From: Salpingoeca rosetta
Taxonomy: Eukaryota; Protista; Choanoflagellata
Length of the DNA stretch: 11,363 nucleotides
Assembly: GCA_033442325.1 (NCBI GenBank)
Contig: JAWQFM010000017.1
Location: forward strand, 710,060 to 721,422
Direction of reading: 5' to 3'
Made by a program: the position numbers and the translations under genes
Notes under the pieces: model-generated
Databases searched by the model: none
The model's input: the letters and a program-made list of their open reading frames with translations, nothing else
What the model was told of the DNA's origin: nothing
Shown: one piece after another, positions 1-11,363 of the stretch
How the letters are laid out: the number at the start of each line of letters is the position of its first letter
Position numbering within the stretch: the stretch's first letter is position 1

Positions 1-607
1 TCCATCTCAATGCCAAGAAGGACGCAGTTGCCGCGTTCCAGTCTTTCCTGCGCCAGACCAAGCTCCCCATCTCGCCCACAACAACAGCACTCCAGACGGA
101 TTCCGATGCCATCTTCCTCGGAGCTGACTTCCAGGCCATCGTCAAGAAGCACCTGAAGCAGCACCAGCAGTCCCCGCCGTACACCCAGGCGCAGAACGGC
201 ATCGTCGAGCGACAGGTGCGCACCCTCTCCGACATGGTGCGAGCCATGATCACGGGTGCAGGCCTCGACGCATCGTACTGGAGCCTCGCCTGCAACCACG
301 CCCTCCACATCCTCAACAACATGCCTCGCCCTTCCCTCCACGGCAAGACACCGCTGCAGATTGTCACGGGCTCGCTGCCCAAGCACGTGCCACAGCTGCA
401 CGTCTTCGGGCAGCCGGCCGTCGTCCACATCAGCACACAGCGCGGACGCCTGCAGCCCAAGGGCCGCCGAGGCATCTACGTCGGCCACAACAGCAGCAGC
501 AACAGCCACCTCGTCTACTTTGAAGACACGAACACCGTTGTGTCCTCCATCCACGTCCGCTTCCTTCCCTTCTCCAAGGCCGATGATGTCGTGGATGAGG
601 GGGAGGA
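1..607 (+). pseudogene. Family-A copia host copy, left arm: integrase core and C-terminal part, interrupted at 607 by the nested element
   Basis: Matches 3013-~3617 of the inner element with about 5 substitutions counted by eye. The frame starting at 3 encodes LQTDSDAIF...AQNGIVER...RRGIYVGH. The reading frame runs into the LTR at 608 and stops at 621-623. Confidence 0.93.
603..607 (+). repeat. Left target-site duplication GAGGA
   Basis: GAGGA immediately precedes the LTR start TGTTGAGAG at 608. The same 5-mer follows the LTR end ...TTTCTACA at 6063-6067. Confidence 0.88.
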
Positions 608-849
608 TGTTGAGAGTCAGTGAGTTTCTGTTTTGTGTTGAGTCCTTCCTAATTTGCCTTCTCATGTGGTTTTGTCTTGTTTGCCAACACCTGCTTTGTG
701 GTTTTTCCGTTGGAAACCTTCCTTTCTCTCTGCTGGCATGCATGTGTGCCAACTGCCTCTCTCTCCTCCTCCTTCCCTGCACACGTGAGTTGTGTGCCAT
801 GTGTGTGTATGTGTGTGCATGCCCGTCATGCTTGGGCAAATGCTATGCC
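608..849 (+). repeat. 5' LTR of family-A element (visible part; remainder and PBS hidden in gap 850-1207)
   Basis: Aligns to 5503-5749 with about 9 small differences. The remaining 313 bp of LTR would end near 1162, inside the 358-N gap, leaving about 45 nt for the PBS. Confidence 0.93.
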
Positions 850-1207
850 NNNNNNNNNNNNNNNNNNNNNNNNNNNNNNNNNNNNNNNNNNNNNNNNNNN
901 NNNNNNNNNNNNNNNNNNNNNNNNNNNNNNNNNNNNNNNNNNNNNNNNNNNNNNNNNNNNNNNNNNNNNNNNNNNNNNNNNNNNNNNNNNNNNNNNNNNN
1001 NNNNNNNNNNNNNNNNNNNNNNNNNNNNNNNNNNNNNNNNNNNNNNNNNNNNNNNNNNNNNNNNNNNNNNNNNNNNNNNNNNNNNNNNNNNNNNNNNNNN
1101 NNNNNNNNNNNNNNNNNNNNNNNNNNNNNNNNNNNNNNNNNNNNNNNNNNNNNNNNNNNNNNNNNNNNNNNNNNNNNNNNNNNNNNNNNNNNNNNNNNNN
1201 NNNNNNN
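850..1207. other. Assembly gap (358 N)
   Basis: Run of N. Confidence 0.99.
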
Positions 1208-1283
1208 ACTCGCTTGTGCTTCTTCTCTCCCTTCTGCTTGTTCCCCTCTCTTGTTTCTCCATCACCTTTCTTGAGCGTGCAGT

Positions 1284-4200
1284 ATGTCTGACCCGTCGGA
1301 CCACGTCGTTTCCACGCCAGGATTCAAGATGGACCTGCCCAAGTTCTCTGGCTCGCCCGGCACCTTTCATGCGTGGAGCATTCGCATGAAGATGGCGCTC
1401 AAGCTGCGCGGCGACGACGTCTGGGCAGCTGTGGAGGCAGGAGCGTCGTCATCAGGAGGTCCAAGCTCAGCGACACGCTCAAGTGCAAGGAGACCGACAG
1501 CAGGAGATCACGCCAACCTCACCGCTGCAAACCTCATCGCGTCCACGCTCTCAGGCTACCCCCTTCTCCTCTTCACCAACGGAGAAGCAGACGTCAACGC
1601 CGGCCAAGGATGGGCCCGGCTCAAGGACCACTACGCTTCGCAGGACCGCCTCCGCATCGCAGAGCTCAAGGAGGCGCAGCTTCACGTCCCCTGCGGCAAC
1701 CTCGCCCGCTTCTTCGAGCGACAAATGGAGCTGCAGCAGCAGTTGCAGGACGCAGGCGTGCGCCAGGACAACGAGGACCTCTTCACCATCGTCTGGAAGC
1801 AGCTGCCACGCTGGACAGCCCCGCTCACGCTTCCCTACTTTGCCAGTGGCCGCTTTCCCTCCCTCCTCGAGCTCAGCATCAGACTGCAGCAGCTGGAGCA
1901 GCAGATGCGTGGTTCACGCACACAGCCGCAGGCAGGCGGCTTCATGGCAAGCGCACCGCCACGCAGAGGCGGAAGACGCGGCTTCTCCAACAACAGCAAC
2001 AACCACGGACGCCAGGGACGCAACAATGGCAACAGCAACGGCAACAGCAACGGCAAAGGGCGCCGCTTCCGTGGCAACTGTCACTACTGTGGCAAGTATG
2101 GACACCGTGCAGCAGAGTGTCGCAAGAAGCAACGCGACAACGGAGCAACAGGCTTCACTGCACAGGCACAGCATCAACATGGTCAAAACGCAGCAACCTT
2201 CGTCGCTGCCACAGCTACTACACCCACGCAGCTGCATGACCCACTCACGTGGCTTGCAGACACGGGTGCTTCACACCACCTCACCTTCGTCAAGGACGCC
2301 TTCGTGGAGCTGACACCGCACCTGCAACAGCATCATCCACGCCACATCACTGCGTTTGGCGGCACACGTGTGCCCGTGCGTGGTGTTGGCTCTGTGCTGT
2401 TGCATGCACGCACGACGAGCGGAGCTACGATGCAGATTGTGTTGCAGGAGTGCCTCTACGTGCCCGAGGGCCAGGCCAACCTCATCGCCCTCGGTCGTCT
2501 GACTAGGGACAGCAGCGGCAGGCCAACGGGCCACTCGCAGCATGATGGCGCTGATGGGCACTACGTGCGCTTCAGCCACGGAGCCGAGGTCAAGCTGAAG
2601 GAGCGCAGCAGCCTCCGATGCTGGCCCATTGTTGCTGTTGGTCCATCCACGGCACACGGACTCACCGCCGATGCCTGCAAGCAACCACAGCAACCCGCAG
2701 CAGCTCCTGCAGCCCAGAGCAAGGTGCAGACACCATCGATGCATGAGGTGCTTGGCCACCGCAACGACAACGACGTGCAGCAGTACTGCAAGCTGATGGG
2801 CATCGACGATCGCAACGCCATCAGCAGCAAGCAGTGCGCAACGTGTGCAGTGACCAAGAGCACTCGTCACAGCGTCAGCAAGCACGCGGAGCGCACACAG
2901 GTGCCCGGCGAGCGCATCCACGCCGACATCGTCGACTGGACCGCGGACTCACCCACGGGCAAGCGCTACAGCCTCGTCATCGTCGATGAGGGCAGCAAGC
3001 TCCTGCATGCAGTCCATCTCAATGCCAAGAAGGACGCAGTTGCCGCGTTCCAGTCTTTCCTGCGCGAGACCAAGCTCCCCATCTCGCCCACAACAACAGC
3101 ACTCCAGACGGATTCCGATGCCATCTTCCTCGGAGCTGACTTCCAGGCCATCGTCAAGAAGCACCTGAAGCAGCACCAGCAGTCCCCGCCGTACACCCAG
3201 GCGCAGAACGGCATCGTCGAGCGACAGGTGCGCACCCTCTCCGACATGGTGCGAGCCATGATCACGGGTGCAGGCCTCGACGCATCGTACTGGAGCCTCG
3301 CCTGCAACCACGCCCTCCACATCCTCAACAACATGCCTCACCCTTCCCTCTACGGCAAGACACCGCTGCAGATTGTCACGGGCGCGCTGCCCAAGCACGT
3401 GCCACAGCTGCACGTCTTCGGGCAGCCGGCCGTCGTCCACATCAGCACACAGCGCGGACGCCTGCAGCCCAAGGGCCGCCGAGGCATCTACGTCGGCCAC
3501 AACAGCAGCAGCAACAGCCACCTCGTCTACTTTGAAGACACAAACACCGTTGTGTCCTCCATCCACGTCCGCTTCCTTCCCTTCTCCAAGGCCGATGATG
3601 TCGTGGATGAGGGGGAGCAAGTGCAGACAATCCACGACATCGTCCATGCTCCAGCTTCCNNNNNNNNNNNNNNNNNNNNNNNNNNNNNNNNNNNNNNNNN
3701 NNNNNNNNNNNNNNNNNNNNNNNNNNNNNNNNNNNNNNNNNNNNNNNNNNNNNNNNNNNNNNNNNNNNNNNNNNNNNNNNNNNNNNNNNNNNNNNNNNNN
3801 NNNNNNNNNNNNNNNNNNNNNNNNNNNNNNNNNNNNNNNNNNNNNNNNNNNNNNNNNNNGCAGCAGTGGCGACACCAGCCTCACGGAGCCTGCAAGCATC
3901 AAGCAAGCACTCAAGAGCCAGCAACGCAAGCAGTGGACTCAGGCATGCTTGGAGGAGATCGGGGCGATGGAGCGCAACGGCGTCATCAAGCTCATCCCAC
4001 GCAGCGCCGTGCCACGGCAACACACGCCCCTCAAGTCACGCTTCGTCTTCAAGGTGAAGCGTGATGCGGAAGGCACGCTGACGCGCTTCAAGGCACGCTG
4101 GGTCGCCAAGGGCTTCAGCCAGCGACCGGGCATCGACTTCGACCAGACCTACGCCCCAACACCAGCAGCCAAGACCATCCTCACCGTGCTCGCCGTCTCC

Positions 4201-5508
4201 CTGCAACGACAGCACCAGCTGCACCAGCTCGACTTCAAGTCGGCTTACCTGCAGGCTGATCTCAAGGAGGAGCTGTACATGGAGCTGCCGCCGCACTTCA
4301 CCGACATCGGCGACGGCGCTCAACGCTACGCGGGCAAGGTGTGCCGGCTGCTCAAGCCGCTCTACGGTCTCAAGCAAGCTGGCCGTGCATGGGCCAAGAA
4401 GCTGCACACCTTCCTCAAGACCAACGGATGGGCGCAGAGCCACGTCGACGCATGCCTCTTCACCAAGCTCCACGACGACGGACAGCGCACATGGATCATC
4501 ACGTACGTCGACGACCTCATCATCAGCGGCAGCAGCGAGCGCCACATCCGTGCCTGCAAGCAGCAGATCAAGGAGAGCTTCGAGGCAGAGGACCTGGGCC
4601 CGCTCACCTGGTACCTGGGCCTTCACCTGACGTCACCAGCTGACGGCGTGTTGCACATTGCGCAGACACAGGCCATCAACGACATCGTCAACGACTACAA
4701 CCTGGCAGCGGCAGCCAGCGTGTCCACGCCCATGCGTGTTGGCATCGACGCCTCCAGCATCAGCGAGCAGCCCGACCGACGCCTGCCTTTCCGCAACCTC
4801 GTGGGCTCGCTCCTGTACCTGGCCAACCGCACAAGACCAGACGTCAGCTTCGCGTGCGGACTGCTCTGCCGTTACATGGACCGTTACACGACGGTCCACT
4901 GGCAGGCAGCCAAGCACGTCGTGCGGTACCTGAAGGCGACGAGCGAGCACGGCCTCCTCTTCAAGCGACGCAGCGGCACGCGCAAGGACCAGCCGCTGGA
5001 CCTGGTGTGCTACAGCGATGCCAGCTTCGGCACAGACCAGCTGACGGGCCGCTCCACGACGGGCTTCACCTGCTACATCAACGGCTGTCTTGTGTCTTGG
5101 AGTAGCCGGCTGCAACCCACGGTTGCGCTGAGCACCGCTGAGGCCGAGTACATGGCCATCTCCGCTGCAGCGCAGGACGTCGTCTTCCTGCGGCAGCTGC
5201 TCATGGACCTCGGCGAGCCCGAGGCTGGAGCCACCAAGATGCTGACAGATAACCAGGCGGCCATCGCCATCGGCAACGACCACGTCACCAAGCCGCGCAC
5301 GAAGCACATCCGGGTACGCCACCACTTCGTGCGGGAGCTCATCGCCGACGGAACCATTGTGCTGCAGCACTGTCCCGGCACGCGGATGGTTGCCGACGCG
5401 CTGACCAAGGCACTGGACAAGCAGACCTTCGAGCAGCACCTGCCACGACTGGTGGGAACCTCGACGGCTGAGACGGAGCAGAGGAAGGCAGTTGAGGGGG
5501 AGTGTTGA
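1284..5508 (+). CDS. gag-pol: Gag-Pol polyprotein (Gag with CCHC knuckle, aspartic protease, integrase, reverse transcriptase, RNase H); one apparent +1 frameshift at ~3630 and a 200-N gap
   Basis: ATG at 1284 and Gag N-terminal motif LPKFSGSPGTFHAWSIRM. CHYCGKYGHRAAEC at 2079-2120, WLADTGASHH from 2250, HHCC at 2742-2846, and DDE at 2925/3111/3219 with D-35-E spacing. RT motifs FKARWVAKGFSQ, QLDFKSAYL, LYGLKQAGRAW and YVDD (4504-4515). RNase H motifs YSDAS, STAEAEY, TDNQAA, TKHI and ADALTK. Stop TGA at 5506-5508. The span is 4225 nt; removing one extra A gives 1407 codons plus stop. Confidence 0.9.
2079..2120 (+). other. Gag nucleocapsid zinc knuckle CX2CX4HX4C
   Basis: Translation CHYCGKYGHRAAEC. 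Confidence 0.95.
2742..3600 (+). other. Integrase domain (HHCC zinc finger, D-D(35)-E core, degenerate GKGY region)
   Basis: HEVLGH...CATC; IHADIV; LQTDSD; QNGIVER; GIYVGHNSSSNSHLVY...VVSSIHVRF. Confidence 0.93.
3608..3617 (+). promoter_or_regulatory. Candidate central polypurine tract TGAGGGGGAG
   Basis: Exact 10-nt copy of the 3' PPT (5493-5502), located just after the IN domain near the element midpoint. Also present at 596-605 and 11352-11361. Confidence 0.65.
3660..3859. other. Assembly gap (200 N)
   Basis: Run of N. Confidence 0.99.
3862..5508 (+). other. Reverse transcriptase-RNase H portion of pol (open frame after the gap)
   Basis: Uninterrupted frame from SSGDTSLTEPASIKQAL through YVDD and the RNase H motifs to AVEGEC-stop. 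Confidence 0.95.
5494..5502 (+). promoter_or_regulatory. 3' polypurine tract GAGGGGGAG
   Basis: Purine run directly abutting the TG of the 3' LTR at 5503. Confidence 0.92.
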
Positions 5509-6062
5509 GAGTCAGTGAGTTTCTGTTTTGTGTTGAGTCCTTCCTAATTTGCCTTCTCGTGTGGTTTTGTCTTGTTTGCCAACAACACCTGCTTTGTGGT
5601 TTTTCCGTTGGCAAACATTCCTTCCTCTCTGCTGGCATGCATGTGTGCCAACTGCCTCTCCTCTCCTCCTCTTTCCCCTGCACACGTGAGTTGTGTGCCA
5701 TGTGTGTGTGTGTGTGTGCATGCCCGTCATGCTTGGCAAATGCTATGCCTGCGTGCCATGTAGTGTTGTGAAGTGTTGTCTGTTGTGCATGCTTGCCTGC
5801 AAGCATTCATGCCATGCCTAGCATTGCTCTGCGCGCGCATGTATGCATGCTGCTCATTGTTTAGATTGTTTGTGTTCGTGCACACTCTGCCCATGTCGCC
5901 TTGACAGCGTCATTGACTGTGTGTGCACTTGTCTAGTGTTTGTTTGAGCGTGCTGCCCGAGTTGATTTGGCAGCAGCTTGTTGTGCTTGTTCATTCTCCT
6001 TGTGTTCTTGTTTGTTGCGTTTGCCTACAGTAAACACACACACCACCTGTCGTGTTTCTACA
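5503..6062 (+). repeat. 3' LTR of family-A element (560 bp, complete)
   Basis: Begins TGTTGAGAG and ends TTTCTACA (imperfect terminal inverted repeat TGTWGA). Both boundaries are confirmed by the inverted copy at 8430-8985. Confidence 0.96.
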
Positions 6063-6067
6063 GAGGA
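6063..6067 (+). repeat. Right target-site duplication GAGGA
   Basis: Follows the LTR-terminal CA. Removing 608-6067 restores the in-frame sequence GAT GAG GGG GAG GAG CAA GTG (DEGEEQV). Confidence 0.88.
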
Positions 6068-6359
6068 GCAAGTGCAGACATCCACGACATCGTCCATGCT
6101 CCAGCTTCCCAGTGCACGTGACAGCAGCAACAGCACCACTGACGGTGAGCCACCAACGGTTCACATCGACGAGGACCAGGACGAGGATGTCGAGACAGAC
6201 TTCCTGCTCACGGACTTTGACGCCGACAGCAGCAGCGACACCAACGACGCCAACTACGACCCCGACACAACAGATGCAAGCGACACCGAGGCAGGCGCGT
6301 TCACAGCAAGCAGCAGTGGCGACACCAGCCTCACGGAGCCTGCAAGCATCAAGCAAGCA
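6063..6359 (+). pseudogene. Family-A host copy, right arm: acidic IN-RT linker and start of RT
   Basis: EEQVQTSTTSSMLQLPS...DEDQDEDVETD...SSGDTSLTEPASIKQA. Its ends match 3616-3659 and 3860-3909 of the inner element. Truncated by a gap. Confidence 0.9.
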
Positions 6360-6745: not shown

Positions 6746-8429
6746 GGCTCCTCCTTGTCGGCTGGCTTGTCGACGTAGCCCGTGCAGAGCGGCGTGCCGA
6801 CAGGCTTGCAGTCAGCCATGCCGAAGGTCTCCAGCACGTTGCGCAGGTAGTGCTCCTGGCTCATGGTGACGGTCCTGGCCTTGTGGTCGTGCTGCACCTT
6901 GATGCCGAGACATATGTCTGGACTGCCCAGGTCCTTCATCTTGAAGCGCTTGGAGATGGAGTTCTTGAACGCGGCCATGTCGCTGTCGCTGTCGGCGAAG
7001 ATGAGCAGGTCATCCACGTAGACGGCAACCCACATCACCTTGCCACCCTTGCAGGTGCGGCGGTAGATGCAGGTGTCCGTGGCTGTGGCGACGAAGTCCT
7101 GCTCGCGCATCCAGGCGTCCAGCGTGTGGTTCCATAAGCGCGGGCTCTGCTTCAGGCCATACAGCCCACGCTTGAGGCGCAGGACTGTATTCGGCGAGAA
7201 GATGCCGTCGACGGCCGGTGGCTGGACGTAGATCTCGTGGTCCACGGGCGCGTTGAGGAACGCCGTGTTGACGTCCATCTGCTGGATGTCCATGCCACGC
7301 GCGACGGCCATGGCGAGCATGGTGCGGATGGCTGCGATGGTAGCCGTCGGGGCAAAGGTGTCCGTGTAGTTGACACCGTGGACCTGGGAGTAGCCCTTGG
7401 CAACCCAGCGCGCCTTGTACTTGATCACCTTGCCCTGGTCGTCACGCTTCTTCCGAAAGATGACCATGCTGCGGAGCAGCTTGTGGCCCTTGGGAAGGTC
7501 AGCGCGAGGCACGACGTCGTAGACGTCATTGGCCTGCATTGCCGCAAACTCGTCCAGGATGGCTTGGCGCCACTCCTCAGAGTCTGGCGAGGCAAGCGCC
7601 TCCTTGACGGTGGCTGGCTCAGCTGACGTGGCAAAACTGCCAGCAGCGATGTCTGGTAGATGACCACCCACTGCTGATATCTTCTCCCCCGTACCAGCAG
7701 CGCTGGTGGCAACGTGACACGTGGTGGTTGAGCCACCAGAGGTGTCCTTGTCGCCGAGGGTCTCGGACACCAGCAGCTGGTCCCAGACGGAGCCGCCAAG
7801 GGCGCGTGGCTGGAGCTGCGGCTCCCCCGCACGTGGTGCAGTGGGAGCGCCGGTGGCACTGTCCTCGGTCGAACGCTGAGCGGTCTTGTTGGCATGCGAA
7901 GCAGAGGCACTGCTGTCGTCCTGCTCTTGCTGCTGCTGAGAGGAGGCGGCGTCCTTGTTCTTGATGGCGCCGAAGCGTGCGTGGATGGTGTGGACAACGC
8001 GTCGCGTGTCCGGCATCCAGACGACGTGGGCCTGGTCCTCCTCGGCGAAGCCGACGTAGACGCCGACGCGTGAGCGTGGGTCAAGCTTGTGCCGCGTGCT
8101 GCTCTTCTCCACATGCACGTAGGCCGGCGAGCCGAAGACGCGCAACAGGCTGACGTCGAAGGCGTGCCCAATCAGGGCCTCGAAGGGTGACTTGTCCTTG
8201 AGGCTCCTGCGTGGCGCGATGTTGTGCAGCAGCGTGGCGTGCTGCACGGCGAAGCCCCAGAACGGCTTGTCCAGGTCCGCAGCAAACAGCATCGTACGCG
8301 CCGTCTCGAAGAGGGTGCGGAAAGTGCGCTCCGCGGATCCGTTCTTGGCCTGCGAGTGCGGTGGCGAGAAGCGCTGCTTGATGTCGAAGGCCAGGCACAG
8401 GTCGGTGAAGTCCTGGCTCTTGAAGACGG
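6746..8429 (-). pseudogene. pol: Second, divergent Ty1/copia family (family B): integrase core/C-terminus, linker and reverse transcriptase, interrupted at 8429 by a family-A LTR
   Basis: Open frame VFKSQDF...SPPHSQAKNGSAER...LRVFGSPAYVH...EPATVKEAL...YKARWVAKGYSQVHG...QMDVNTAFL...LYGLKQSPRLW...YVDD (7009-7020)...FKMKDLG. Same motifs as family A but a clearly different sequence. The first ~29 aa of track ORF 6349..8514 are LTR read-through. Confidence 0.93.
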
Positions 8430-8985
8430 TGTAGAAACACGACAGGTGTTGTGTGTGTTTACTGTAGGCAAACGCAACAAACAAGAACACAAGGAGAATG
8501 CACAAGTACAACAAGCTGCTGCCAAATCAACTCGGGCAGCACGCTCAAACAAACACTCGACAAGTGCACACACAGTCAATGACGCTGCCAAGGCGACATG
8601 GGCAGAGTGTGCACGAACACAAGCAATCTAAACAATGAGCAGCATGCATACATGCGCGCAGAGCAATGCTAAGCATGGCATGAATGCTTGCAGGCAAGCA
8701 TACACAACAGACAACACTTCACAACACTACATGGCACGCAGGCATGGCATTTGCCAAACATGACGGGCATGCACACACACATGGCACACATGGCACACAA
8801 CTCACGTGTGCAGAAGGAGGAGGAGAGGAGAGGCAGTTGGCACACATGCATGCCAGCAGAGAGGAAGGAATGTTTGCCAACGGAAAAACCACAAAGCAGG
8901 TGTTGTTGGCAAACAAGACAAAACCACACGAGAAGGCAAATTAGGAAGGACTCAACACAAAACAGAAACTCACTGACTCTCAACA
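8430..8985 (-). repeat. Family-A 3' LTR, inverted (556 bp, complete)
   Basis: Reverse complement of 5503-6062 with roughly 15 differences by eye. On the + strand it starts TGTAGAAAC and ends CTCTCAACA. Confidence 0.96.
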
Positions 8986-9137
8986 CTCCCCCTCAACTGC
9001 CTTCCTCTGCTCCGTCTCAGCCGTCGAGGTTCCCACCAGTCGTGGCAGGTGCTGCTCGAAGGTCTGCTTGTCCAGTGCCTTGGTCAGCGCGTCGGCAACC
9101 ATCTGCGTGCCGGGACAGTGCTGCAGCACAATGGTTC
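8980..9137 (-). pseudogene. RNase H C-terminal remnant of the inverted family-A copy
   Basis: Reverse complement of 5351-5508 (TIVLQHCPGTQMVADALTKALDKQTFEQHLPRLVGTSTAETEQRKAVEGEC-stop). Homology ends abruptly at 9137. Confidence 0.92.
8986..8994 (-). promoter_or_regulatory. Polypurine tract of the inverted family-A copy
   Basis: CTCCCCCTC on + equals GAGGGGGAG on -, abutting the LTR. Confidence 0.9.
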
Positions 9138-9307
9138 TGTGCCATGTCGAACGCAAGACAAGCAGAGGATGTGCGTGTGTTTGTGTGTGCGTGCGTTAGC
9201 GTAGTGGTATGCTCACTTGTCTGCGTGTGTTTGTGTGGGTTTACTGTGTGATGTGGAAGACAGACGGGAACAGGATGATGAACACAAGTGAAGCACTCCC
9301 GCATTGT
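9138..9307 (-). mobile_element. Probable LTR terminus of a different element inserted in the family-A RNase H
   Basis: Non-coding TG-rich sequence starting with TGTG exactly where family-A homology ends. On the - strand it carries ACAGTAAAC plus a CA-rich tail like the family-A LTR 3' end, and finishes ...GGCACA. Confidence 0.5.
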
Positions 9308-9988: not shown

Positions 9989-10003
9989 CGAGCAACCACA
10001 CAA

Positions 10004-11363
10004 GCAGACACGGGTGCTTCACACCACCTCACCTTCGTCAAGGACGCCTTCGTGGAGCTGACACCGCACCTGCAACAGCACCATCACGCCACATCACTGC
10101 GTTTGGCGGCACACGTGTGCCCGTGCGCGGTGTTGGCTCTGTGCTGTTGCATGCACGCACGACGAGCGGAGCCAGGATGCAGATTGTGCTACAGGAGTGC
10201 CTCTACGTGCCCGAGGGCCAGGCCAACCTCATCGCCCTCGGTCGTCTGACCAGGGACAGCAGCGGCAGGCCAACGGGCCACTCGCAGCGTGATGGCGCTG
10301 ATGGGCACTACGTGCGCTTCAGCCACGGAGCCGAGGTCAAGCTGAAGGAGCGCAGCAGCCTCCGGTGCTGGCCCATTGTTGCTGTTGGTCCATCCACGGC
10401 ACACGGTCTCACCGCCGATGCCTGCAAGCAACCACAGCAACCCGCAGCAGCTCCTGCAGCCCAGAGCAAAGCACACACACCATCGATGCATGAGGTGCTT
10501 GGCCACCGCAACGACAACGACGTGCAGCAGTACTGCAAGCTGATGGGCATCGACGATCGCAACGCCATCAGCAGCAAGCAGTGTACAACGTGCGCAGTGA
10601 CCAAGAGCACTCGTCACAGCGTCAGCAAGCACGCGGAGGGCACACAGGTGCCCGGCGAGCGCATCCACGCCGACATCGTCGACTGGACCGCGGACTCACC
10701 CACGGGCAAGCGCTACAGCCTCGTCATCGTCGATGAGGGCAGTAAGCTCTTACATGCAGTCCACCTCAACGCCAAGAAGGACGCAGTTGCCGCGTTCCAG
10801 TCTTTCCTGCGCGAGACCAAGCTCCCCATCTCGCCCACAACAACAGCACTCCAGACGGATTCCGATGCCATCTTCCTCGGAGCTGACTTCCAGGCCATCG
10901 TCAAGAAGCACCTGAAGCAGCACCAGCAGTCCCCGCCGTACACCCAGGCGCAGAACGGCATCGTCGAGCGACAGGTGCGCACCCTCTCCGACATGGTGCG
11001 AGCCATGATCACGGGTGCAGGCCTCGACGCATCGTACTGGAGCCTCGCCTGCAACCACGCCCTGCACATCCTCAACAACATGCCTCGCCCTTCCCTCCAC
11101 GGCAAGACACCGCTGCAAATTGTCACGGGCTCGCTGCCCAAGCACGTGCCGCAGCTGCACATCTTCGGGCAGCCGGCCGTCGTCCACATCAGCACACAGC
11201 GCGGACGCCTGCAGCCCAAGGGTCGTCGAGGCATCTACGTCGGCCACAACAGCAGCAGCAACAGCCACCTCGTCTACTTTGCAGACACAAACACTGTTGT
11301 GTCCTCCATCCACGTCCGCTTCCTTTCCTTCTCCAAGGCCGATGTCATGGATGAGGGGGAGGA
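10004..11363 (+). pseudogene. Further family-A copy: protease-integrase fragment
   Basis: Matches 2256-~3617 with scattered substitutions, a 1-bp deletion near 10085 (CATCCACGC to CATCACGC) and a 3-bp deletion near 11341. It begins at the protease ADTG motif and runs off the window end. Confidence 0.92.

What the first reader, a model, noticed from the sequence alone, without database searches (positions are those of the whole stretch)
596..6067. Copia element integrated into a sister copy exactly at the internal PPT copy
Seen: 596-605 is TGAGGGGGAG, identical to the 3' PPT (5493-5502). The TSD GAGGA (603-607 and 6063-6067) overlaps its end, and excising 608-6067 restores the host frame DEGEEQV. 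Established: copia integrases make 5-bp TSDs, and Ty1 and lentiviral cDNAs carry a plus-strand discontinuity at the central PPT. Inference: landing on this one short motif in a ~5.5-kb element may reflect targeting of the central PPT, either in chromosomal copies or in a second cDNA molecule before or during integration. The two junctions (IN-to-U3 and U5-to-linker) are also those expected from deletion-type autointegration, though host and inner copy differ by about 5 SNPs.
Basis: partly seen in the sequence, partly recalled or inferred. Interest (0 to 1): 0.75.

Follow-up and report, generated by a model that had tools for sequence, protein, structure and literature searches.

The report
Copia element nested at sister's internal PPT
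A jumping gene of the choanoflagellate Salpingoeca rosetta has inserted into another copy of itself exactly at a short internal priming signal, but a census of 20 other self-insertions shows no pile-up there, so this is most likely one ordinary nested insertion in a transposon-only island.

Summary
An Srospv2 (Ty1/copia) element at 608-6062 sits inside another Srospv2 copy. It is flanked by a 5-bp duplication, GAGGA, that overlaps the end of an internal 10-nt copy of the 3' polypurine tract. Removing the insert restores the published Gag-Pol frame.

Both assembly gaps match the lengths expected for one colinear element.

The internal PPT copy is probably a real central PPT. It is conserved in 22 uninterrupted copies. 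The sister family Srospv3 carries internal copies of its own, different PPT.

Targeting is not supported. I found 21 independent Srospv2-into-Srospv2 junctions. Their sites are spread evenly (KS p=0.67), and only the index case lies at the PPT copy. None of at least 29 Srospv3 copies has an LTR start (either family's) next to its internal PPT.

Srospv2 lies almost entirely in one island of at most 40 kb per scaffold, made almost wholly of copia elements. Self-nesting is therefore expected there.

A rare flap-directed event, as known for Ty1 autointegration, remains possible at about 20%. Linkage of the two junctions is unproven. Public 454 and Sanger reads could settle both points.

Other readers of this scan noted copia nests and one autointegration-like chain elsewhere in this genome.

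The parts
1..607 (+). Host Srospv2 copy, integrase C-terminal coding part. The frame is open and it ends inside the purine run.
   Evidence: It differs by 5 substitutions in 605 nt from the inner copy's 3013-3617. The stretch begins directly after a 3.2-kb N run.
596..605 (+). Internal PPT copy (candidate central PPT) of the host copy
   Evidence: Identical to the 3' PPT at 5493-5502. Conserved in 22 uninterrupted copies.
603..607 (+). Left copy of the target-site duplication GAGGA
   Evidence: Five bp is the length published for all S. rosetta copia-like families (PMC6875170).
608..849 (+). First 242 nt of the 5' LTR of the inserted element. The rest is in the gap.
   Evidence: Alignment A1. 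It carries two variants found nowhere else in the assembly.
850..1207 (.). Assembly gap hiding the rest of the 5' LTR and the primer-binding region
   Evidence: The expected length is about 365 nt against 358 N.
1284..3659 (+). Gag-protease-integrase reading frame of the inserted element, with 792 open codons
   Evidence: Pol_BBD at residues 323-408 and SH3_retrovirus at residues 706-765.
3608..3617 (+). The inserted element's own internal PPT copy, uninterrupted and in the short GAG-less allele
3660..3859 (.). Assembly gap in the integrase-RT linker
   Evidence: The interval is 199-200 nt in other copies.
3860..5508 (+). Reverse transcriptase and RNase H reading frame. The stop codon at 5506-5508 lies inside the LTR.
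   Evidence: RVT_2, E=8e-56.
5493..5502 (+). 3' polypurine tract
   Evidence: It directly precedes the LTR in every 3' LTR context sampled genome-wide.
5503..6062 (+). 3' LTR of the inserted element. This is OTU '3_GAGGA' of the published Srospv2 LTR alignment.
   Evidence: It shares a unique GCGCGCGC variant with the published sequence. Its first third differs from the published version.
6063..6067 (+). Right copy of the target-site duplication GAGGA
6063..6359 (+). Host copy resumed: the integrase-RT linker, with an open frame, running to the next gap
   Evidence: It is 99.3% identical to the C24 and C65 copies.
6746..8438 (-). Srospv3 fragment (integrase to RT) with its own internal PPT copy at 7822-7831
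   Evidence: It matches the published Srospv3 reference.
8439..9140 (-). 3' end (RNase H tail, PPT and LTR) of another Srospv2 copy, nested in the Srospv3 fragment
9989..11363 (+). Third Srospv2 copy (protease to integrase). Its contig stops exactly at ...GAGGGGGAGGA, before more than 20 kb of N.

Best explanation
One ordinary integrase-mediated insertion. A Srospv2 cDNA integrated into a chromosomal Srospv2 copy and made the family's usual 5-bp duplication (GAGGA).

The event happened inside one of the small islands, one per scaffold, that hold nearly all Srospv2 and much of Srospv3. These islands consist almost wholly of copia sequence, so a new insertion there lands in a sister element more often than not.

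The hit on the internal PPT copy is real. That motif is probably a working central PPT. The coincidence is best read as chance: one of 21 evenly spread self-insertions.

Shown here: both junctions, the duplication, the restored frame, the even spread of sites, and the confinement to islands.

Inferred: that both junctions lie on one chromosome molecule, and that islands arise from regional targeting or from selective retention.
For: Junctions, duplication and restored frame.

The host allele GAGGAG is the majority allele, in 20 of 22 copies.

Both gaps fit one colinear element.

Census of LTR ends genome-wide:
- 21 independent Srospv2-in-Srospv2 events.
- Internal sites, in window-equivalent coordinates: 1604, 1901, 2115, 2300, 2758, 2973, 2994, 3123, 3447, 3583, 3617, 4321, 4405, 4445 and 5470.
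- Six further events lie in LTRs.
- The two orientations are balanced, 7 to 8.
- KS test against a uniform spread gives p=0.67.
- At least 7 more events are in Srospv3.

The duplicated 5-mers show no purine preference.

No TGTTG-type LTR start lies next to the Srospv3 internal PPT copies, although at least 29 copies carry them.

Nearly all of 148 Srospv2 landmarks lie in one island of at most 40 kb per scaffold. The non-N part of the window is about 81% Srospv2 and 17% Srospv3.

In the published LTR alignment, the 3' LTR of this insertion carries the same rare markers (CTCAT, TTTCTC) as the 5' LTR seen here. This fits one element.
Against: The site coincidence is tight:
- By analogy with the 3' PPT, the plus-strand primer would be cut after ...GAGGGGGAG. 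That point lies inside the 5-bp duplication.
- Chance gives about 2% for this, and about 5% for any overlap with the 10-mer, across 21 events.

Ty1 shows that integrase can be drawn to a central PPT flap (cited in PMC7197481).

In this assembly the two LTRs differ by 5 substitutions and 6 indels in 241 aligned nt. I attribute this to the assembly, but did not prove it.

Two gaps leave the linkage of the junctions unproven. The contig 3860-6359 has identical 50-nt ends, as either a circle or a collapsed repeat would give.
Confidence: 0.6

Rival explanations
1. Flap-directed integration, as in Ty1 autointegration. The target was not chromatin but a Srospv2 cDNA carrying a plus-strand discontinuity or flap at its central PPT. 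Integrase joined LTR ends there, either within one cDNA or between two cDNAs. The product reached the chromosome by integration of the composite or by recombination with a resident copy.
For: - The internal motif behaves like a real central PPT: it is an exact copy, it is conserved, and Srospv3 has internal copies of its own variant PPT.
- The predicted primer cleavage point lies inside the duplication (inference).
- Chance placement is about 2-5%.
- The junction types equal those of deletion circles (PMC4751563).
Against: - It is a single event.
- None of the 20 other self-insertions is at the motif. This bounds any such route to less than about 14% of self-insertions.
- No case exists at the Srospv3 internal PPTs.
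- Circles are dead ends, so extra steps are needed to reach a chromosome.
- The 5' LTR has variants private to this locus, which is unlike fresh cDNA from an active copy.
Confidence: 0.2
2. Assembly product. The two junction contigs derive from extrachromosomal circles, or from two different loci. The Newbler/Arachne scaffolder threaded them through a generic Srospv2 copy, so the nested element as drawn does not exist on one molecule.
For: - Every contig in the window ends in a repeat.
- There are two gaps inside the element.
- The third copy's contig stops exactly at GAGGA.
- Contig 3860-6359 has identical 50-nt ends.
- The first third of the 3' LTR differs between this assembly and the published alignment, and here resembles the neighbouring minus-strand LTR.
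- Assembly was by 454 plus Sanger at 33x (PMC4054682).
Against: - A matching 5-bp duplication of the majority allele at both junctions is not something an assembler invents.
- Gap sizes fit the expected lengths.
- No two-LTR circle junction is present in the assembly.
- The published survey independently lists this 3' LTR with flank GAGGA.
Confidence: 0.12
3. Local preference in chromosomal DNA. The purine run, or an R-loop on a transcribed copy at the RNase H-resistant tract, makes this spot a favoured target in chromatin.
For: - In the host allele the run is 12 purines.
- A second insertion, in opposite orientation, lies 34 nt upstream in another copy (C10).
Against: - All-purine duplications are 2 of 62.
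- One neighbour within 34 nt is expected by chance with p=0.20.
- 22 Srospv2 and at least 29 Srospv3 copies carry the motif uninterrupted.
Confidence: 0.05

Closest known systems
Nested LTR-retrotransposon insertions in transposon-rich islands (own knowledge: for example maize intergenic nests, and centromeric copia or gypsy clusters of fungi and oomycetes)
   Same: An element lies inside a sister element. It has a family-typical target duplication, and the host is colinear once the insert is removed. Several nesting levels occur in one small region: Srospv2 in Srospv2, Srospv2 in Srospv3, and a probable Srospv1 LTR in Srospv2.
   Different: Here the islands are tiny (at most 40 kb), there is about one per scaffold, and they sit in a 55-Mb gene-dense protist genome. 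None of the papers I searched describes them.
Ty1 autointegration at the central PPT DNA flap (Garfinkel et al. 2006, J Virol 80:11920; known to me through PMC7197481 and PMC4751563, because the paper itself is not held)
   Same: The element is a copia-type element with an internal PPT copy in the integrase region. An LTR end is joined to the element's own sequence at that motif. The junction pair equals that of deletion circles.
   Different: The Ty1 events are many, extrachromosomal and dependent on the PPT. Here there is one event, placed in a chromosome scaffold, with host and insert differing in sequence and no clustering.
Central polypurine tracts of Ty1 (PPT2), EVADE/ATCOPIA93 and lentiviruses
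   Same: An exact internal repeat of the 3' PPT lies in pol. There is more than one copy in Srospv3, as in EVADE (PMC7197481).
   Different: Function is inferred here from conservation and from co-variation between two families only. No plus-strand intermediates have been seen.
Srospv2, as described by Southworth et al. 2019 (PMC6875170)
   Same: The LTR start is the same, the length is about 5.45 kb, the LTR is about 554-560 nt, the duplication is 5 bp, and the Gag-Pol sequence matches. This very 3' LTR is in their alignment as '3_GAGGA'.
   Different: The paper does not mention PPTs, nesting or the island distribution: 'polypurine' has no hit in the text, and 'PPT', 'polypurine' and 'nested' have none in the supplements.

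Membership tests
Ty1/copia LTR retrotransposon, family Srospv2 | Domain order protease - integrase - reverse transcriptase (RVT_2 type) | tested here: met
   Pol_BBD and the integrase SH3-like domain lie in 1284-3659. RVT_2 (E=8e-56) lies in 3862-5505.
Ty1/copia LTR retrotransposon, family Srospv2 | LTRs with TG...CA ends and a PPT abutting the 3' LTR | tested here: met
Ty1/copia LTR retrotransposon, family Srospv2 | 5-bp target-site duplication | tested here: met
   GAGGA is at 603-607 and 6063-6067. This is the length published for the family.
Ty1/copia LTR retrotransposon, family Srospv2 | Identity with the published reference | tested here: met
   The LTR start and the Gag-Pol residues match Additional file 2 of PMC6875170.
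Ty1/copia LTR retrotransposon, family Srospv2 | Primer-binding site after the 5' LTR | tested here: inconclusive
   It is hidden in gap 850-1207 in this copy. Other copies have GATTATGAGACCCAGCC after the LTR. Its match to a tRNA-Met anticodon arm is my inference and was not tested.
Simple nested insertion (one element, one event) | Host halves colinear and in frame after removal of the insert plus one duplication copy | tested here: met
Simple nested insertion (one element, one event) | The two LTRs are sister copies | tested here: inconclusive
   In this assembly they differ by 5 substitutions and 6 indels in 241 aligned nt, and they differ at lineage markers. In the published alignment the 3' LTR shares the 5' LTR's markers.
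Simple nested insertion (one element, one event) | Both junctions on one chromosomal molecule | not testable with these tools
   Two N runs lie inside the element. No reads are available here.
Ty1-type flap-directed autointegration | A functional central PPT at the site | tested here: met
   Met at sequence level only. The 10-mer is exact and conserved in 22 copies. Srospv3 repeats its own variant PPT internally. A plus-strand break was not testable.
Ty1-type flap-directed autointegration | Independent events cluster at the central PPT | tested here: not met
   1 of 21 Srospv2 self-insertions is at the motif, with an even spread. There is no case at the Srospv3 internal PPTs.
Ty1-type flap-directed autointegration | Products are extrachromosomal circles | not testable with these tools
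   Only an assembly is available. No two-LTR junction is present in it. Contig 3860-6359 has identical ends, but a collapsed repeat gives the same result.

The most novel reading that the evidence does not exclude
This locus is a chromosomal fossil of flap-directed integration. A Srospv2 cDNA was joined into a second Srospv2 cDNA at the plus-strand discontinuity of its central PPT, and the composite then entered the genome. If so, the Ty1 'special DNA structure as target' rule would extend to a choanoflagellate, and such events could leave heritable nested copies.
Probability: 0.2. Interest if true: 0.65.

Novelty: new member of a known kind. Interest (0 to 1): 0.35.

Why it matters
As it stands, this is an ordinary nested retrotransposon insertion in a family already catalogued, so it matters little by itself.

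Two by-products are more useful:

- **Central PPTs.** Srospv2 and Srospv3 keep exact internal copies of their own, different polypurine tracts. This is good comparative evidence that central PPTs, known from Ty1, EVADE and lentiviruses, also operate in copia elements of the closest relatives of animals.

- **Islands.** These elements are confined to one small island per scaffold. That explains the frequent self-nesting and marks candidate centromeres or another special chromatin domain in S. rosetta.

The flap-targeting idea is directly testable with the public 454 and Sanger reads of this genome.

Tried and rejected
**Template switching or misassembly between the two identical 10-mers.** Rejected. 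That would join ...GAGGGGGAG directly to TGTTG. The extra GA and the matching right junction need a staggered cut.

**Solo LTR collapsed by the assembler.** Rejected. The 5' and 3' LTR pieces differ in their shared 242 nt.

**Plus-strand priming from the internal PPT giving an extended terminal repeat.** Rejected. It predicts neither junction.

**'The host has a 1-nt deletion and is defective'.** This was my own early reading, and I withdrew it. GACATCC is the majority allele and matches the published protein.

**LTR lineage discordance as evidence for two molecules.** Withdrawn after the published alignment showed a concordant 3' LTR.

**Breakpoints near the motif seen by BLAST.** Two of them (C24, C5) are assembly gaps. 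The C9 and C6 breaks abut unrelated sequence that I did not identify. The C1 and C8 breaks are the LTR insertions at 3447, and the C10 break is the one at 3583.

**Two-LTR circle junction.** None is in the assembly.

**Fetching more genome sequence.** I did not try to obtain those letters another way. The small scaffold C46, which carries the same LTR-end/protease junction twice, therefore could not be resolved. The stretch after the window is N for more than 20 kb.

**Garfinkel 2006.** The paper is not held. Its content is cited second-hand.
Full report
**What the window is.**
The window is G000:C17:710060-721422. N runs flank it: 3.2 kb on the left and more than 20 kb on the right. Earlier notes name the genome as Salpingoeca rosetta. 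I confirmed this: the LTR start and the Gag-Pol sequence equal the published Srospv2 reference (PMC6875170). Pfam gives the copia order, with a protease beta-barrel and the integrase SH3-like domain upstream and RVT_2 downstream.

- TGAGGGGGAG occurs at 596-605 and again as the 3' PPT at 5493-5502. Shuffles expect 0.01 matches in the window.
- The LTR is 5503-6062. Its first 242 nt follow position 607.
- GAGGA flanks both ends.
- Removing 608-6067 gives an open frame on both sides. That frame equals the published protein ...DDVVDEGEEQVQTSTTSS....
- Host and inner copy differ by exactly 5 substitutions in 605 nt.
- The inner copy lacks one GAG codon. 20 of 22 uninterrupted copies have the host's GAGGAG form, so the 5-bp duplication is read correctly.

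**The gaps, tested first.**
- Gap 850-1207: in 15 or more other copies the sequence at 1208 starts 48 nt after the LTR end. About 365 nt are therefore expected, against 358 N.
- Gap 3660-3859: the interval is 200 nt in the host and 199 nt in the closest relative. A length of 199 would keep gag-pol in one frame; 200 would not.
- Both gaps are compatible with one colinear element. The PBS, the U5 end of the 5' LTR and the frame across the second gap are not seen.

**Is the internal motif a real central PPT?**
It is present in all 22 uninterrupted Srospv2 copies found. It lies just after the integrase SH3-like domain.

The published Srospv3 reference has a different PPT, TGCGGGGGAG, abutting its 3' LTR. 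It repeats that exact 10-mer twice internally. One repeat is in the homologous integrase-RT linker. There is also a near copy. The window's own Srospv3 fragment shows the linker copy at 7822-7831.

Internal copies that change together with each family's own PPT argue for function. The paper on these elements never mentions PPTs.

**Is the site targeted?**
I located all exact and near-exact Srospv2 LTR starts and ends in the genome. I fetched their flanks and placed them on the window by BLAST.

- Normal contexts are PPT|LTR and LTR|GATTATGAGACCC.
- The remaining junctions include 21 independent insertions into Srospv2-like sequence.
- Fifteen are internal sites: 1604, 1901, 2115, 2300, 2758, 2973, 2994, 3123, 3447, 3583, 3617 (the index case), 4321, 4405, 4445 and 5470.
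- Six are in LTRs.
- At least seven more are insertions into Srospv3.
- The internal sites fit a uniform spread (KS p=0.67) and orientation is balanced.
- Only the index case touches the PPT copy. The nearest other event is 34 nt away in the opposite orientation, which chance gives with p=0.20.
- The duplicated 5-mers show no purine bias.
- In Srospv3, at least 29 copies carry the uninterrupted linker PPT copy. No TGTTG-type LTR start lies within 8 nt after either internal copy.
- With none of 20 other events at the motif, more than about 14% PPT-directed self-insertions is excluded at the 5% level.

**Why self-nesting is common.**
Nearly all of 148 Srospv2 landmarks fall in a single island of at most 40 kb per scaffold. 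Most Srospv3 linker sites lie in the same islands. The readable part of the window is about 81% Srospv2 and 17% Srospv3, plus a probable Srospv1 LTR piece. An insertion into such an island will usually hit a sister copy. Whether the islands reflect regional targeting or survival of insertions only there is not shown.

**The serious rival.**
The coincidence is tight. By analogy with the 3' PPT, the plus-strand primer would end after ...GAGGGGGAG, at 605/606. That point is inside the duplication 603-607. Chance gives about 2% for this, and about 5% for any overlap with the 10-mer, over 21 events.

Ty1 autointegration is reported to occur at the central PPT flap (Garfinkel 2006, quoted in PMC7197481). 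Deletion circles carry exactly these two junction types (PMC4751563).

A rare flap-directed event therefore cannot be dismissed. I put it near 20%.

Against it:
- There is no clustering.
- Variants private to this locus lie in the 5' LTR.
- No two-LTR circle junction is in the assembly.
- Extra steps are needed for a circle or composite cDNA to become chromosomal.

**An apparent anomaly, resolved.**
In this assembly the two LTRs differ by 5 substitutions and 6 indels in 241 aligned nt, and at markers that separate LTR lineages. Srospv2 elements normally show 99.6-100% LTR identity.

The published LTR alignment contains this very LTR as '3_GAGGA', identified by a unique GCGCGCGC variant. There its first third carries the same markers as the 5' LTR seen here. 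In G000 that third instead is 99% like the minus-strand LTR 2.4 kb away.

The discordance is therefore most likely an assembly effect in a 454/Sanger hybrid assembly. LTR dating is unsafe here.

**What stays open.**
- The two junctions are not proven to be on one molecule.
- Contig 3860-6359 has identical 50-nt ends. Both a circle and a collapsed nested repeat would give this.
- The third copy's contig stops exactly at GAGGA before a long N run. This fits a Newbler break at a read-divergence point, but it could hide a second insertion.
- The public reads can settle all three points.

**Verdict.**
The internal PPT copy is genuine and probably functional. Targeting is not supported by the census. 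The finding is a new example of a known kind of event.

Noticed in passing
Genome-wide, for example C1:1.174-1.199 Mb, C8:1.503-1.543 Mb, C10:0.767-0.793 Mb and C17:0.710-0.721 Mb (this window): Nearly all Srospv2 landmarks, and most Srospv3 linker sites, lie in one island of at most 40 kb per scaffold. Only five landmarks lie outside. This is a centromere-like distribution that I did not find mentioned in the three S. rosetta papers searched.
   Followed up: partly
Window 7822-7831 (minus strand); published Srospv3 reference at about nt 2120, 3161 and 5234: Srospv3 repeats its own PPT (TGCGGGGGAG) exactly at two internal sites. Srospv2 repeats its different PPT (TGAGGGGGAG) once. This is co-variation that points to working central PPTs.
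   Followed up: yes
Window 11341-11363: A third Srospv2 copy ends its contig exactly at ...GAGGGGGAGGA, the same nucleotide as the host/LTR junction. More than 20 kb of N follow. It is either a contig break at a read-divergence point or a second interrupted copy.
   Followed up: partly
Window 5503-5700 compared with the published '3_GAGGA' LTR: The first third of this 3' LTR differs between this assembly and the 2019 published alignment of the same locus. Here it resembles the neighbouring minus-strand LTR (8813-9140). Sequence in these islands depends on the assembly version.
   Followed up: partly
Window 9138-9307: This stretch looks like the 3' part of a Srospv1 LTR on the minus strand, abutting the truncated RNase H end of the minus-strand Srospv2 copy. 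The match is 28 nt to the published Srospv1 LTR, judged by eye.
   Followed up: partly
C1:1194244 (L006) and C8:1524884 (L018): The same junction, Srospv2 integrase at window-equivalent 3447 joined to an LTR start, occurs on two scaffolds. In C8 the LTR's other side is Srospv2 at 4445, so there is no matching duplication. This suggests duplication or recombination between nests.
   Followed up: no
C46 (unplaced, 6062 nt): L054, L055, L083: The junction of an LTR end to Srospv2 protease (window-equivalent 2300) appears twice, 4.2 kb apart. Next to one of them is a low-quality-looking duplicate of the PPT and LTR start. It may be a circle-like or tandem artefact.
   Followed up: partly
Other copies, directly after the 5' LTR (for example L006:1004-1020): The primer-binding region GATTATGAGACCCAGCC contains the complement of a CUCAUAA anticodon loop. 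This suggests priming by an internal part of a tRNA-Met, as in Drosophila copia. The comparison is from my own knowledge and was not tested.
   Followed up: no
Window 5503-5508: The pol stop codon (TGA at 5506-5508) lies inside the first six bases of the 3' LTR. The 3' PPT itself is coding (…AVEGEC*), and both PPT copies encode E-G-E.
   Followed up: yes
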